From: Octopus bimaculoides
Taxonomy: Eukaryota
NCBI RefSeq assembly: GCF_001194135.2
Contig: NC_069009.1
Coordinates: 762,627-826,626, forward strand
Direction: 5' to 3'
Length of the DNA: 64,000 nucleotides
Shown here piece after piece: positions 631 to 8,732 of the stretch. The notes under the pieces were generated by a model. The model was not told the origin of the DNA and did no database searches. It was given only the letters and a program-made list of their open reading frames with translations. Every line of letters starts with the position of its first letter. Within the stretch, counting starts at the first letter, position 1. The position numbers and the translations under genes were made by a program.

Positions 631-702
631 AGATCCCGTAAACTGTGAAGGGTTTTGAATGTACTCTCCTTAATAATCGATATTTGATTATAGGATAGAT
701 CT
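631..702 (-). CDS. Gene A LRR exon (DLSYNQISIIKESTFKTLHSLRDL)
   Basis: 72 bp, tttcag acceptor, gtaagt donor, phase 2-2, typical 24-aa LRR. Confidence 0.92.
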
Positions 703-6407: not shown

Positions 6408-8732
6408 TGTGTGTGCGTGTATGTGTGTTTGTGTGTGTGTTTGTATATATATATGTTTATAATTATATAAATAAATATATGTAGCCCGTTGTATATTTAC
6501 AGGCACATAAAGAGAGACTGTGATTTACAGAACAGAAAATGGAGAGGAAAGAAGTAGGAGAAGACAAATATATCGAAATGCAGGGTCAAAGGGAAAAGTA
6601 TCAGCAACGTTGAATCAACTTACAAAAGTACTAAACTTGGAAGATTTTCGATGAGTTCAATATTCGAGATTCTGTTATTGGATAATCGTCTGTAAGACAG
6701 AAGAGAATTATGGAAGAGATTAGTCATAAAAGCTTTGATGTTATGTCGAATTAATTAGATGCAGGAAGAGAAAACAAAGGTAGATGTGAAAAAATAAGTC
6801 GAAGAAGACGATGATAACGATGAGTGAAGATTATAATGGGTGAAGATTATAAGGAGTGAAGATTATAATGAGTGTTGAATATGTTTGATGAAGAAAATGA
6901 TGACAATAACAACGTTGATGATGTTCACTGGTTCGAAGTGGTGATGCTGTTGGCGATCGTGCTGCTGTTGTCAATTGTGATGATGCGTGGTGGCGGTGGT
7001 GGCAGTGGTGGTGGCGGCGGTGGCGGTGGTGGTGGTGATGGTGGTGTTGATGATGATAATGATGGTGATGATGATCATGATCATGATGTTGGTAACGATG
7101 ATTATGAGGCTGCTGCTCATTGTCCTTATAAAGGATGCAAGCATGTCCTCCATTCTGCCATGGGTTGTATAAACTGTTTACACCTGCGTTAGTGAGATGC
7201 ATGTGGTGCATTGTAAGAAAATTGCGTATTTTTAAATCAGTTTTCGAGATCTCAACGACGGACCATCTTAAGGATGTGAAACAGAGACATGGATACTGGA
7301 AACTGAACGCGTTTTTCTCAACAGGGGGAGAGAGTTTATGTGTGTTGTTGTTGTTGTTGTTGTTGTTGGCACTCCGTCGCTTACGACGTCGAGGGTTCCA
7401 GTTGATCCGATCAACGGAACAGCCTGCTCATGAAATTAACGTGCAAGTGGCTGAGCACTCCACAGACACGTGTACCCTTAACGTAGTTCTCGGGGATATT
7501 CAGCGTGACACACAGTGTGACAAGGCTGACCCTTTGAATTACAGGTGCAACAGGAAGTAAGAGTGAGAGAAAGTTGTGGTGGAAGAGAACAGCAGAGTTC
7601 GCCACCATCGCCTGCCGGAGCCTCGTGGAGCTTTAGGTGTTTTCGCTCAATAAACACTCACAACACCCGGTCTGGGAATCGAAACCGCGATCCTATGACC
7701 GCGAGTCCGCTGCCCTAACCACTGGGCCATTGCGCCTCCACTTATGTATGTTAGAGAAGGGTAAAAGGTTAAGAAAGAAAGATAGGAAGACATTAATTAT
7801 TTAGAAATATACAGTCAAGAAATGGCATCAGCAAGATCGATCTGACTTACAGAATCTCTAATTTGTGAAGATTTACAAATGACTCTTTTCCAATTTTCGA
7901 GATCTTATTACCGTATAGATTTCTGTAAGAGAATAGAGAATTGATAACATATAATATAGAAGAGATTCGTTATAAAATTTTAAATATTACGTTTAATGAA
8001 TTAAATGCAGAAATGCAGAAGTGAAAAAATTAGATGGAGAAGATGATAATGACGTATGAAGATTATGATGATAACGATGAAGGTAGGTGATGATGATGAT
8101 GAGGAAATGTATTACAAATCCAACGTCTGTTTCTGGGGGCACATGGTCTATAATAGTGTTTGTAGATTGATTCTGTCATAGGACGAGACGAGTTTCCGTC
8201 TTCATGGATTAGATCTTACATTTGAAATGCTAAAGGAAAGACGTTCAAACATCATCTTTGAACTTCTTTCCTTTAACATTAGTAAAATAAATTAAACGGA
8301 AACGTTCTCTGATGGACAAACCCTTTGCAGTTCATGGCTCCCGCCGCTAGAATCAACTTGATGCGAATCTAAACCCTGAGGAACAGTCTAGTTTACTTCG
8401 CAGCTAGTAACATATCGACTTCTTTTACTATAACATAACATGGTGTTTAAAGCTGTGAGATTTACACCGTAAGGTATTGGCTGAGAACATAACCAATGAG
8501 CGTTTAAAACACTGAAAGTGGAAAATATCTAAAAGTTGTCTACTACTTACATATATTTAACATTCGGAAGAAAGTACTTTGGAACCGATGTCAGGTTGAG
8601 ATTTGAACAATTTACATGCTCAGAACCATTACATGTACACATACAAAAAATGTCTGCACGTATCTCAAAAGATAACCTCATGTATAATATCAGCAAAAAT
8701 GTTAGTATTACTTGATATCTTTGACTGGGCAT
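631..8732 (-). CDS. Gene A (5' partial, multi-exon): signal peptide + LRRNT + at least 9 LRR exons; inferred paralogue of the gene B adhesion GPCR; continues beyond the left edge
   Basis: Ten exons with canonical AG/GT ends and consistent phase 2: 8551-8732, 7851-7922, 6624-6689, 5613-5684, 3968-4039, 2523-2594, 1964-2035, 1248-1319, 1029-1100, 631-702. No stop codons. The first exon is homologous to gene B exon 1. GPCR identity is inferred from paralogy. Confidence 0.88.
1029..1100 (-). CDS. Gene A LRR exon (GLSYNQISNIEEIAFKNLHSLRYL)
   Basis: 72 bp, cag/gtaagt, phase 2-2. Confidence 0.92.
1248..1319 (-). CDS. Gene A LRR exon (HLSHNKISNIEESTFKTLGSLKDL)
   Basis: 72 bp, cag/gtaagt, phase 2-2. 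Confidence 0.92.
1520..1745 (+). mobile_element. SINE family 3, 3' portion
   Basis: Reverse complement of the ttgtttcagtcatttgactgcggccatgctggagcaccgcc body seen at 15890 and 23020. Confidence 0.8.
1964..2035 (-). CDS. Gene A LRR exon (DLTGNEIFKIDQNSFVNVTRLEYL)
   Basis: 72 bp, cag/gtaagt, phase 2-2. Confidence 0.9.
2196..2395 (+). mobile_element. tRNA-derived SINE family 2 copy
   Basis: ggcagaatcgttag...gttctgagttcaaattccgccgaagtcgactttgcctttcatcc; B-box-like gagttcaaattcc; matches copies at 47533-48141 and 52900-53100. Confidence 0.82.
2523..2594 (-). CDS. Gene A LRR exon (FLYNNKISNIERESFENLPELADL)
   Basis: 72 bp, cag/gtaagt, phase 2-2. Confidence 0.92.
2850..3300. repeat. Compound (GAT)n/GAGT simple repeat, intronic
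   Basis: Runs of gat interrupted by gagt; explains the spurious Ser/His/Ile ORF 2658-3299. Confidence 0.95.
3968..4039 (-). CDS. Gene A LRR exon (YLSNNKISIIEQRSFENLERLRTL)
   Basis: 72 bp, cag/gtaagt, phase 2-2. Confidence 0.92.
4840..5024. repeat. Near-perfect 185-bp palindrome (92-bp arms, 1-nt centre, 1 mismatch)
   Basis: atttaacacactcaccggtaaaatttcc ... ggaaattttaccggtgagtgtgttaaat, centred on g4932; abuts an N-gap. Confidence 0.9.
5613..5684 (-). CDS. Gene A LRR exon (DLSYNDITIIKKKTFKNLCSLQEL)
   Basis: 72 bp, cag/gtaagt, phase 2-2. Confidence 0.92.
6624..6689 (-). CDS. Gene A short LRR exon, 66 bp (RLSNNRISNIELIENLPSLVLL)
   Basis: cag/gtaagt, phase 2-2, net in-frame 6-nt deletion relative to sister exons. 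Confidence 0.85.
7200..7330 (+). mobile_element. Possible L1/Tx1-type LINE endonuclease-end fragment
   Basis: Translates to ...TDH...HGYWKLNAFFS, resembling the DH...GYWKLN motif after the L1/Tx1 endonuclease; short and decayed. Confidence 0.35.
7343..7740 (-). mobile_element. tRNA-derived SINE family 1, full length with (CAA)n tail
   Basis: Head tggaggcgcaatggcccagtggttagggcagcgg...ggtttcgattcccag (A and B boxes) on the minus strand; many near-identical copies in the window. Confidence 0.92.
7851..7922 (-). CDS. Gene A first LRR exon (NLYGNKISKIGKESFVNLHKLEIL)
   Basis: 72 bp, cag/gtaagt, phase 2-2. Confidence 0.92.
8551..8732 (-). CDS. Gene A first coding exon: signal peptide + LRRNT (MPSQRYQVILTFLLILYMRLSFEIRADIFCMCTCNGSEHVNCSNLNLTSVPKYFLPNVKY)
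   Basis: Hydrophobic N-terminus, CxC..C LRRNT motif, gtaagt donor at 8550 (phase 2), acceptor at 8753-8755 leaving 20 nt of UTR; homologous to 45497-45681. Confidence 0.9.

What the first reader, a model, noticed from the sequence alone, without database searches (positions are those of the whole stretch)
631..7922. LRR exons are self-contained phase 2-2 cassettes whose junction splits the ligand-facing beta-strand
All 17 in-gene LRR exons are phase 2-2 and 72 bp (one is 66 bp), so any subset can be skipped or duplicated in frame. The intron falls inside LxxL|xLxxN, so each new junction recombines concave-face residues. Those positions are highly varied: N-YG, R-SN, D-SY, Y-SN, F-YN, D-TG, H-SH, G-SY, D-SY in A and Y-SN, Q-DN, Y-QN, R-CN, R-SD, D-SS, D-SN, N-SR in B. 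Intron flanks are shared between cassettes (gtaagttggatcagt...tgata; ...ttctcttttatcttacag; ttatgtctaattaattagatgcag), and 480-780, 880-1160 and 1170-1360 are visibly tandem copies. The cassettes were therefore duplicated with their flanks and remain substrates for unequal crossing-over.
Basis: partly seen in the sequence, partly recalled or inferred. Interest (0 to 1): 0.75.

Follow-up and report, generated by a model that had tools for sequence, protein, structure and literature searches.

The report
Repeat-exon cassettes in octopus receptor genes
This is the front of an octopus cell-surface receptor gene in which every leucine-rich repeat is its own 72-base exon that can be gained or lost without breaking the reading frame: a gene design already known elsewhere, found here in a fast-expanding octopus receptor family whose repeat number differs about three-fold between two octopus species.

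Summary
All 17 LRR exons lie on the minus strand. Sixteen are 72 bp and one is 66 bp, and all are phase 2-2. The intron sits in the codon of the fourth consensus Leu (LxxL|xLxxN). The three quoted flank motifs occur only at cassette flanks, and 564-768, 962-1166 and 1181-1385 are tandem copies. Both gaps are intronic and at least 107 nt from any exon, so the frame is safe, but nine cassettes is a lower bound.

The window holds a tandem array of LRR-bearing adhesion GPCR genes from the published octopus-specific expansion. Gene A (631-8732) is its 5' part, gene B (17712-45681) is complete, and gene C is a 3' half.

Cassettes were duplicated together with at least 150 bp of intron on each side. 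Most copies are old: flanks are 54% identical, similar to synonymous sites. Concave-face residues are no more variable than other non-scaffold residues, and no positive selection is shown.

Turnover is real. Paralogues carry 6, 8, at least 9 and at least 12 cassettes. The gap-free O. sinensis orthologue of gene B carries about 20-24, through a 12.7-kb block triplicated at 98-99% identity.

Exon skipping has only annotation-level support, in one paralogue. The design is ancestral (Haliotis) and known from LH/LGR receptors, brown-alga ROCO genes and Tetrahymena.

The parts
8551..8732 (-). Gene A first coding exon: ATG, signal peptide and LRRNT (…CMCTCNGSEHVNCSNLNLTSVPKYFLPNVKY), ending AT|gtaagt (phase 2)
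7851..7922 (-). Cassette A1, 72 bp, phase 2-2 (NLYGNKISKIGKESFVNLHKLEI)
6624..6689 (-). Cassette A2, 66 bp (two-codon deletion in the convex part), phase 2-2
5792..6365 (.). Assembly gap inside the A2-to-A3 intron; right edge is (TG)n
5613..5684 (-). Cassette A3, 72 bp, phase 2-2
4327..4839 (.). Assembly gap inside the A3-to-A4 intron; left edge is (CA)n, right edge is a 92-nt perfect inverted repeat
3968..4039 (-). Cassette A4, 72 bp, phase 2-2
2523..2594 (-). Cassette A5, 72 bp, phase 2-2
1964..2035 (-). Cassette A6, 72 bp, phase 2-2
1248..1319 (-). Cassette A7, 72 bp, phase 2-2; core of tandem copy 1181-1385
1029..1100 (-). Cassette A8, 72 bp, phase 2-2; core of tandem copy 962-1166. The 147-bp intron to A7 is a donor flank fused to an acceptor flank (219-bp minimal unit)
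631..702 (-). Cassette A9, 72 bp, phase 2-2; core of tandem copy 564-768. Gene A continues beyond the window start, because the conserved terminal 'FLFLP' cassette, LRRCT, GAIN and 7TM have not been reached
11541..12065 (-). Orphan duplicate X of A1 plus its downstream intron (cassette 11967-12038). Exon 72/72 identical, unique intron 97%. Breakpoints lie 27 bp upstream of the acceptor and inside a SINE. X lies upstream of gene A exon 1, on a 2.7-kb contig between two gaps
45497..45681 (-). Gene B first coding exon: signal peptide and LRRNT, ending TT|gtaagt (phase 2)
36478..44817 (-). Gene B LRR array: cassettes B1 44746-44817, B2 44316-44387, B3 42705-42776, B4 41919-41990, B5 40815-40886, B6 38719-38790, B7 37149-37220, B8 36478-36549. 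All are 72 bp and phase 2-2
33910..35419 (-). Gene B LRRCT-like exon (about 35279-35419) and two exons of a Cys-rich module ending CCSGNQCN (about 34682-34774 and 33910-34089). Limits are from tblastn and are not splice-refined
   Evidence: no Pfam hit
23572..30057 (-). Gene B GAIN-like exons (about 29833-30057, 25923-26243, 24383-24526) and the GPS exon (23572-23724, CSCNHLTSFALLM)
   Evidence: GPS E 5e-17
17712..22098 (-). Gene B 7TM exons: TM1 about 21940-22098, TM2 20688-20816, TM3 20115-20243, TM4 19092-19211, and TM5-7 plus tail and stop at 17712-18302
56308..62998 (-). Gene C, 3' half (GAIN, GPS and TM1-7) of a third tandem paralogue

Best explanation
Window 631-7922, with exon 1 at 8551-8732, is the LRR-coding 5' part of gene A. 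Gene A is one of three same-strand tandem genes (C, B, A) for LRR-bearing adhesion GPCRs of the octopus-specific expansion. The ectodomain architecture is signal peptide, LRRNT, n LRRs, LRRCT, a Cys-rich module, GAIN/GPS and 7TM.

Shown:
- Each 24-residue LRR is one 72-bp exon bounded by phase-2 introns placed in the codon of consensus Leu-4.
- The array grew by tandem duplication of exon-plus-intron units. The minimal unit seen is 219 bp, and homologous flanks extend at least 150 bp on each side.
- The scaffold residues are under strong purifying selection. The other residues, on the concave face or not, drift almost neutrally.
- This one-repeat-per-exon design is inherited (it is present in Haliotis). 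Because it is symmetric, any gain or loss of units keeps the frame and puts L, I or F at the junction.
- Cassette number therefore evolves fast: 6, 8, at least 9 and at least 12 in paralogues, and 8 against about 20-24 between orthologues.

Inferred, not shown:
- The cassettes are spliced constitutively in genomic order into one long LRR solenoid. This solenoid is the ligand-binding part of a receptor that signals through GAIN/GPS autoproteolysis and a tethered agonist.
- New copies arise by unequal exchange or replication slippage between recently duplicated units or interspersed SINEs, rather than between the old diverged flanks.
For: - Exon geometry and phase.
- No other cassettes in the window.
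- LRR_8 E 3e-92 and 7tm_2. GPS E 5e-17.
- 7TM similarity to ADGRG2/G6/G4, E about 1e-52.
- Gene B is collinear with full-length O. bimaculoides XP_052827273 (P0033).
- LRR, GPS and 7tm_2 occur in one protein in 6 of 8 relatives. One of these sits on 4-kb mRNA-like contigs.
- The family is published as an octopus-specific tandem expansion.
- Flank homology.
- Tandem 205-nt copies.
- dN/dS is 0.07 at scaffold positions against 0.66-0.90 elsewhere, and flank identity 0.54 is close to synonymous identity (pS 0.52).
- Junction residues lie in beta-strands, 7 of 7.
- An NCBI model (P0015) splices six cassettes at exactly these junctions.
- The paralogue L003 has 92-96% identical units.
- The O. sinensis orthologue has 24 cassette hits and a 12.7-kb triplication at 98-99.4%.
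- Haliotis LRR exons are 72, 72 and 78 bp, phase 2-2.
- Donors are GTAAGT in 15 of 17, with pyrimidine-rich acceptors.
Against: - No cDNA for genes A or B is in the searchable collections. Splicing order, constitutive inclusion, and the link of gene A's LRRs to a 7TM outside the window are all inferred.
- Three annotated isoforms of a paralogue differ by whole cassettes, so skipping may occur.
- The short-read, gapped assembly could have collapsed near-identical blocks, and the O. sinensis triplication could itself be an assembly error.
- The first 15-20 intronic bases are more conserved (73%) than the exons (62%). This is more than pure neutral decay, though splice-site constraint explains much of it.
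Confidence: 0.85

Rival explanations
1. The cassette array is an active diversity generator. Regulated skipping or selection of cassettes by alternative splicing produces many receptor isoforms with different concave faces from one gene. This is the reader's implied reading, analogous to what is claimed for brown-alga ROCO genes.
For: - The phase 2-2 symmetry and the always-hydrophobic junction codon make every isoform translatable.
- Three annotated O. bimaculoides isoforms of a paralogue (1204, 1132 and 1132 aa) differ by exactly three cassettes, and the two short forms drop different triplets, while the genome holds all four units.
- Precedent in ROCO genes.
- The family is expressed in axial nerve cord, suckers and skin.
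Against: - Splice sites are uniformly strong (GTAAGT in 15 of 17; pyrimidine fraction 0.62-0.94, at least 0.75 in 16 of 17).
- There is no transcript evidence for A or B.
- The isoforms involve 92-96% identical units, exactly where short-read transcript assembly collapses copies.
- There is no convincing intron-end pairing of the Dscam type (mean z -0.8).
- There is no excess variability or positive selection on the concave face.
Confidence: 0.15
2. The shared intron flanks are conserved because they are functional, as intronic splicing enhancers or pairing elements needed to splice short, similar exons correctly, and not merely because of common descent.
For: - The first 15 and last 20 intronic bases are 73% identical, against 62% for exons and 54% for deeper flanks.
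- The exonic -1 base is always T, forced by the Leu/Ile codon, so a perfect intronic GTAAGT may be compensatory.
- Four of 14 introns show end-pairing with z of about -2.
Against: - Beyond about 20 nt, flank identity equals synonymous-site identity.
- Flank homology is present with the close paralogue L001 but is lost, apart from about 15 bp around the exon, with the more distant paralogue L003. That is the pattern neutral decay predicts.
- The pairing signal is weak and not position-conserved.
Confidence: 0.1
3. Part of the pattern is an assembly artefact. X is a mis-scaffolded or chimeric contig, and cassette numbers (9 and 8 here, 24 in O. sinensis) reflect collapse or false duplication rather than biology.
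For: - X sits on a 2.7-kb contig between two gaps, with sharp breakpoints.
- The window has 22 gaps, 13 of them at microsatellites.
- A perfect 92-nt fold-back and a head-to-head telomere repeat abut gaps.
- Repeats that are 98-99% identical are hard for any assembler.
Against: - The 17 cassettes are all distinct (at most 85% identical), so they cannot be duplicated reads.
- X differs from A1 by about 2% plus two indels, and its upstream sequence is unrelated, so it is not simply a second copy of the same contig.
- The three O. sinensis blocks differ by substitutions that change cassette peptides, and the locus has no N.
- Cassette counts also differ among annotated paralogues.
Confidence: 0.1

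Closest known systems
Glycoprotein-hormone receptor and LGR genes (LH, FSH, TSH receptors)
   Same: The LRR ectodomain of a 7TM receptor is encoded by a run of similar-sized exons, roughly one LRR each, and all introns are in phase 2. This has long been read as growth by duplication of a prototypic LRR exon (as summarised in PMC11378527, citing Koo 1991 and Kobe & Deisenhofer 1994).
   Different: Those are rhodopsin-class GPCRs with fixed LRR numbers across vertebrates. Here the 7TM is adhesion class (GPS plus 7tm_2), and cassette number changes between paralogues and between congeneric species.
Brown-alga LRR-ROCO genes (Zambounis 2012; Teng 2024)
   Same: 72-bp LRR exons in phase 2, repetitive exon-intron units, variable LRR number between recent duplicates, and a proposal of exon shuffling plus alternative splicing to diversify a concave binding face.
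   Different: Those are cytoplasmic GTPase proteins of an unrelated lineage, with reported positive selection on concave sites and observed splice variants. Here no positive selection is detected and no cDNA is available.
Tetrahymena 90-bp LRR exon arrays (Xiong 2019, PMC6564038)
   Same: Uniform-length LRR exons with more than 96% phase-2 introns, a 'junction amino acid' shared by neighbouring exons, and expansion attributed to unequal crossing-over and repeat-mediated recombination.
   Different: The exons are 90 bp, number tens of thousands genome-wide, and lie in ciliate genes of unknown function.
Octopus-specific 'group 3' adhesion-GPCR expansion (Ritschard 2019, PMC6408891)
   Same: Octopus adhesion GPCRs with GPS and 7TM, LRRs in some models and a Death domain in one, arranged in tandem clusters and expressed in axial nerve cord, suckers and skin. 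The closest proteins to gene B are O. bimaculoides members of this kind, and one relative has LRRs plus a Death domain.
   Different: That paper worked on protein models and did not describe the cassette exon structure or cassette-number turnover. It found LRRs in only 5 of 22 models, probably an underestimate because models split the LRR part from the 7TM part.
Vertebrate LRR-bearing adhesion GPCRs ADGRA2/ADGRA3 (GPR124/125)
   Same: N-terminal LRRs plus LRRCT on an adhesion GPCR. NCBI names some octopus relatives 'ADGRA2/A3-like', and the Haliotis relative hits the GAIN_ADGRA3 profile.
   Different: No Ig domain is present. A Cys-rich module and a SEA-like region follow the LRRCT instead. 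The 7TM is closest to ADGRG2/G6/G4 among solved structures. There are many more LRRs.

Membership tests
Typical 24-residue leucine-rich repeat (Pfam LRR_8) | Tandem LxxLxLxxNxL-type repeats of 20-30 residues | tested here: met
   LRR_8 E 3.1e-92 for gene A and 2.6e-55 for gene B. L6, N9, I11, I14, F19, L22 and L1 are invariant or nearly so in 16 cassettes.
Typical 24-residue leucine-rich repeat (Pfam LRR_8) | Solenoid with one beta-strand per repeat on the concave side | tested here: met
   AlphaFold2 model of paralogue P0015, with pLDDT 78-93 over the LRRs, has one strand per repeat.
Adhesion GPCR (class B2) | GPS motif / GAIN domain immediately before TM1 | tested here: met
   Gene B exon 23548-23733 hits PF01825 GPS at E 5.1e-17 and carries CSCNHLTSFALLM. 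For gene A this region lies outside the window.
Adhesion GPCR (class B2) | Secretin/adhesion-type 7TM | tested here: met
   7tm_2 hits on the terminal exons of genes B and C and on the TM3 exon. ADGRG2/G6/G4 match at E about 1e-52.
Adhesion GPCR (class B2) | Extracellular adhesion-type domains and 7TM on one polypeptide | tested here: inconclusive
   True for 6 of 8 closest full-length relatives, for a relative on about 4-kb mRNA-like contigs, and by collinearity of gene B with P0033. There is no cDNA of A or B themselves.
Adhesion GPCR (class B2) | Autoproteolysis at HL|T and tethered-agonist activation | not testable with these tools
   The motif is intact in gene B. Cleavage needs biochemistry.
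Symmetric one-LRR-per-exon phase-2 arrays (LH/LGR receptors, ROCO, Tetrahymena) | One repeat per exon with uniform exon length | tested here: met
   16 exons of 72 bp and one of 66 bp.
Symmetric one-LRR-per-exon phase-2 arrays (LH/LGR receptors, ROCO, Tetrahymena) | All bounding introns in phase 2 | tested here: met
   17 of 17 cassettes, plus the donors of exon 1 in A and B. The same holds in L001, L003, L004 and Haliotis L005.
Symmetric one-LRR-per-exon phase-2 arrays (LH/LGR receptors, ROCO, Tetrahymena) | The duplicated unit includes intron sequence | tested here: met
   Flank homology across +/-150 bp. 46-53% of pairs beat all shuffles. A 219-bp minimal unit is seen.
Symmetric one-LRR-per-exon phase-2 arrays (LH/LGR receptors, ROCO, Tetrahymena) | Alternative splicing of cassettes (claimed for ROCO) | tested here: inconclusive
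   Only annotated isoforms of one paralogue support it. No transcript was found for A, B or the orthologue.
Symmetric one-LRR-per-exon phase-2 arrays (LH/LGR receptors, ROCO, Tetrahymena) | Positive selection on concave-face positions (reported for ROCO) | tested here: not met
   dN/dS is 0.90 over all pairs (saturated) and 0.35 in the closest pairs, never above 1. Entropy is 2.41 against 2.09 bits. The test has low power.
ADGRA subfamily (ADGRA2/3) | LRR-LRRCT followed by Ig and hormone-receptor motif | tested here: not met
   No Ig hit in any relative. A Cys-rich module and a SEA-like region follow the LRRCT.
ADGRA subfamily (ADGRA2/3) | 7TM/GAIN closest to ADGRA | tested here: inconclusive
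   The best solved structures are ADGRG2/G6/G4, but no ADGRA 7TM appeared among the hits. The Haliotis relative hits GAIN_ADGRA3.
Octopus-specific group-3 adhesion GPCR expansion (Ritschard 2019) | Octopus adhesion GPCRs in tandem clusters, some with LRR or Death domains | tested here: inconclusive
   Three tandem genes lie in the window. The nearest relatives are O. bimaculoides proteins, including one with LRRs plus a Death domain. Placement in their tree was not done.
Dscam-type mutually exclusive exon clusters | Docking/selector RNA pairing between intron elements | tested here: not met
   Duplex energies between intron ends have mean z -0.8, and 4 of 14 are near -2. No conserved complementary pair was found.

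The most novel reading that the evidence does not exclude
Octopus LRR-adhesion GPCRs could form a recognition-diversity system. Rapid germline gain and loss of in-frame LRR cassettes, visible as a three-fold difference between congeneric orthologues, would combine with cell- or tissue-specific skipping of cassettes. Together these would give neurons and sucker cells a varied set of LRR binding faces, working alongside the expanded protocadherins.
Probability: 0.12. Interest if true: 0.8.

Novelty: new member of a known kind. Interest (0 to 1): 0.45.

Why it matters
The finding gives a concrete structural reason why this octopus-specific receptor family can change its ligand-binding ectodomain quickly. 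Every LRR is a frame-neutral module, and whole blocks of modules have been amplified recently in one species (about 20-24 cassettes against 8 in orthologues).

It also shows that current octopus gene models under-report these receptors. LRR parts are split from 7TM parts, and arrays are probably collapsed in short-read assemblies. This affects published counts of LRR-bearing adhesion GPCRs.

The general principle of phase-2 LRR exon cassettes is already established in LH/LGR receptors, brown algae and ciliates. The value here is as a well-documented animal example with measurable turnover, not as a new mechanism.

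Tried and rejected
I used stop-free segments and tblastn instead.
I modelled paralogue P0015 instead.
3. I considered that the Cys-rich exons at 33865-34807 were a nested Ly6-like gene. This is rejected, because they are collinear with the same module in full-length relatives. There is no Pfam hit, so 'Ly6/uPAR-like' is only a resemblance.
4. Haliotis isoforms differing by 24 aa looked like cassette skipping, but the difference lies in the C-terminal tail.
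5. The loci of P0036 and P0043 are not on record.
6. The Dscam-like intron pairing signal is weak.
7. I tested hypervariability and positive selection on the concave face and found neither.
8. I tested whether window flanks are conserved with a distant paralogue. They are not (L003), which argues against functional constraint.
9. A search for transcript-derived proteins of A, B or the orthologue's cassette block found none.
10. ARAGORN calls no tRNA in the tRNA-like SINE heads.
11. I checked whether B's gaps hide the extra O. sinensis cassette type (DLARNE…). The orthologous junction at 40534/40533 is contiguous, so it is not hidden there.

Full report
**Observation**

The LRR units are on the minus strand. 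Reading each with its flanks gives nine in gene A (7851-7922 down to 631-702) and eight in gene B (44746-44817 down to 36478-36549).

- Sixteen exons are 72 bp. A2 (6624-6689) is 66 bp because of a two-codon deletion.
- Each exon starts with one base and ends with two, which is phase 2-2.
- The split codon is that of the fourth consensus leucine (LxxL|xLxxN).
- A nucleotide profile built from the cassettes finds these 17 plus one orphan (X, 11967-12038) and nothing else on either strand.
- The three quoted flank motifs occur 12, 12 and 5 times, against 2.05, 0.15 and 0 expected, and only at cassette flanks.
- The 'visibly tandem copies' are a 205-nt family at 564-768, 962-1166 and 1181-1385, 75-80% identical.

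**Gaps**

Both gaps are inside introns, A3-to-A4 and A2-to-A3. The nearest exon edges are 107-773 nt from a gap. Each gap abuts a (CA)n or (TG)n array, as do 13 of the window's 22 gaps. The joins A2+A3 and A3+A4 give TTA and are in frame regardless of gap content, because every cassette is symmetric.

The gaps cannot tell us whether further cassettes or collapsed near-identical copies are missing, so nine is a minimum. For gene B, the orthologous O. sinensis introns show no cassette where B's gaps lie.

**What the genes are**

The concatenated cassettes hit LRR_8 at E 3e-92 for A and 3e-55 for B. Two terminal ORFs, 17712-18254 and 56191-56769, hit 7tm_2. Gene B is complete. It runs in this order:

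- a first coding exon with signal peptide and LRRNT (45497-45681);
- B1-B8;
- an LRRCT-like exon;
- two exons of a Cys-rich module ending CCSGNQCN;
- GAIN-like exons;
- a GPS exon (PF01825, E 5e-17, CSCNHLTSFALLM);
- TM1-TM7.

All of these are collinear with the full-length O. bimaculoides protein P0033.

Among solved structures the 7TM is closest to ADGRG2/G6/G4, at E about 1e-52. Six of the eight nearest full-length relatives carry LRR, GPS and 7tm_2 in one protein. One of them sits on roughly 4-kb contigs that look like mRNA.

Gene A has its own signal-peptide/LRRNT exon at 8551-8732 and runs off the window start. Gene C contributes its 3' half (56308-62998).

This matches the octopus-specific, tandemly clustered adhesion-GPCR expansion of Ritschard et al. 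2019. That family has LRRs in some models, a Death domain in one, and expression in axial nerve cord, suckers and skin.

The window is from an octopus that is not O. sinensis, since orthologous identity is 81-92%. It shares its SINE family and its gap style with O. bimaculoides loci. Its own proteins are absent from the databases.

**Flanks**

Aligning all cassettes with +/-150 bp shows homology over the whole span for all but B8.

- After removing the 20 acceptor-proximal and 15 donor-proximal bases, 46% of upstream and 53% of downstream flank pairs score above every dinucleotide shuffle, and far above real intronic controls.
- Mean pairwise identity is 0.62 in exons, 0.73 in the splice-proximal bases and 0.54 in deeper flanks. 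The non-homologous baseline, from B8, is about 0.45.
- The A7-to-A8 intron (147 bp) is simply a donor flank fused to an acceptor flank, giving a 219-bp exon-plus-intron unit.

So the cassettes were duplicated with their introns. Most copies are old: flank divergence is about the same as synonymous divergence (pS 0.52) and exceeds the between-species divergence of orthologous flanks (13-19%).

**Structure and variability**

In an AlphaFold2 model of paralogue P0015, whose six cassettes are spliced at the same junctions in the NCBI model, all seven junction residues are the second residue of a beta-strand.

Every possible donor/acceptor pairing yields L, I or F at the junction.

The concave positions are not specially variable. 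Mean entropy is 2.41 bits, against 2.09 for other non-scaffold positions, and x7 is Ser in 10 of 16 cassettes. dN/dS by position class:

| Position class | All pairs | Closest pairs |
|---|---|---|
| Scaffold codons | 0.07 | not computable (dN = 0) |
| Concave codons | 0.90 | 0.35 |
| Other non-scaffold codons | 0.66 | 0.75 |

This is relaxed constraint, not demonstrable diversifying selection. The test has low power.

**Turnover**

Cassette number differs among paralogues: 6 in the L001 gene, 8 in B, at least 9 in A, and at least 12 in the L003 gene.

Recent events exist.

- X copies A1 plus its downstream intron. The exon is 72/72 identical, the unique intron is 97% identical, and one breakpoint lies inside a SINE.
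- In L003, units a, a' and b are 92-96% identical over 450-515 bp.

Most telling is the gap-free O. sinensis orthologue of gene B.

- It has 24 cassette-profile hits, about 20 intact and four decayed.
- A block of about 12.7 kb holding about seven cassettes is triplicated at 98.0-99.4% identity.
- Older sub-duplications are about 93% identical.
- B1 and B4-B8 have orthologue-grade partners there (81-92%). B2, B3 and all gene A cassettes do not.

The array therefore expands and contracts on a between-species timescale. The substrates are probably long, recently duplicated blocks or SINEs (92-95% identical), not the 54-72% identical old flanks.

**Splicing**

There is no cDNA evidence for A or B.

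- Splice sites are strong: GTAAGT in 15 of 17 donors, and pyrimidine-rich acceptors. The exonic -1 base is always T because of the Leu/Ile codon, which may explain the perfect intronic half of the donor. This favours constitutive inclusion.
- Against that, three annotated isoforms of the L003 gene (1204, 1132 and 1132 aa) differ by exactly three cassettes, and the two short forms drop different triplets, while the genome holds all units.
- Those units are 92-96% identical, so collapse during transcript assembly is an equally good explanation.

**Comparison with what is known**

The one-LRR-per-exon, phase-2 design is ancestral in this receptor family. The Haliotis relative has LRR exons of 72, 72 and 78 bp, phase 2-2, with the intron at the same repeat position.

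The same design and the same evolutionary reading are published for three other cases:

- LH and gonadotropin receptors: phase 2, with growth by exon duplication.
- Brown-alga ROCO genes: 72-bp phase-2 exons, with shuffling and alternative splicing.
- Tetrahymena: 90-bp exons, more than 96% phase-2 introns, a 'junction amino acid', and unequal crossing-over.

I found no paper describing it for octopus adhesion GPCRs. This is therefore a new member of a known kind. Its most notable feature is the roughly three-fold difference in cassette number between orthologues.

**Limits**

- Gene A is incomplete in the window.
- The assemblies may be imperfect.
- Subfamily assignment (ADGRG-like or ADGRA-like) is unsettled.
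- The receptor's function and activation mechanism are inferred from family knowledge only.

Noticed in passing
window 11541-12065: Orphan copy X of cassette A1 plus its downstream intron and part of a SINE, about 98% identical to the original. It lies 3.3 kb upstream of gene A's first coding exon, on a 2.7-kb contig bounded by two gaps. It is either a very recent partial duplication or a scaffolding error.
   Followed up: yes
window 4840-5024: Inverted repeat with 92-nt arms, 99% complementary, with a 1-nt spacer, directly abutting gap 4327-4839. It could be a fold-back element or a chimeric-read artefact.
   Followed up: partly
window 29093-29146: Head-to-head telomere-type repeat, (CCCTAA)4 followed by (TTAGGG)5, inside an intron of gene B about 30 bp from gap 28073-29061. 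No copies are expected by chance.
   Followed up: partly
window 33284-33559 (-): Mariner-type transposase relic (Pfam Transposase_1, E 1.7e-13) in the gene B intron downstream of the second Cys-rich-module exon, between that module and the GAIN-like exons.
   Followed up: yes
window 33910-34774 (-): Two exons encode a Cys-rich module (LQCQTCSG…CCSGNQCNKND) between the LRRCT and the GAIN. It is conserved in octopus, Haliotis and other mollusc relatives. The pattern recalls Ly6/uPAR domains, but no Pfam model matches.
   Followed up: partly
window 7363-7741, 11541-11857, 14198-14487, 18370-18752, 24610-24915, 31652-31881, 46032-46430, 63634-64000: At least eight copies of a roughly 390-bp SINE with a tRNA-like head, 90-95% identical to copies in O. 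bimaculoides loci. ARAGORN calls none of them as tRNA. They are plausible substrates for non-allelic recombination, and one breakpoint of X lies inside one.
   Followed up: partly
window 45590-45681 vs L001 9901-10201: The signal peptide of gene B is 31/31 identical to that of the paralogue P0015, and the exon-1 DNA is 87% identical, while the rest of the proteins are only about 45% identical. This suggests gene conversion or strong constraint on the 5' exon.
   Followed up: partly
L001 10001-27242: NCBI annotates the LRR part (P0015, 251 aa, with a tail that looks like intron read-through) and the GPS/7TM part (698 aa) as two separate genes 4.6 kb apart. This is probably one LRR-adhesion GPCR split by the annotation.
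   Followed up: partly
window 2110-2200, 2700-3300, 4190-4260, 6790-7090, 8040-8100: A (GAT)n-rich microsatellite, (ATC)n on the gene strand, recurs upstream of nearly every cassette, so it was part of the ancestral duplicated unit. It produces long spurious ORFs such as 2658-3299.
   Followed up: no
window 38148-38318 and 39164-39535 (-): Two copies of an unidentified repeat encoding …GMRTQVRNFPKTPDEGWRVYQPKRCVNNKQD…. Both are adjacent to gaps in gene B's LRR introns.
   Followed up: no
L004 3487-3558, 8946-9020, 27816-27994, 40252-40430: Four decayed pseudo-cassettes, with frame or splice sites lost, lie inside the O. sinensis array. The RefSeq model also omits two apparently intact cassettes.
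   Followed up: partly
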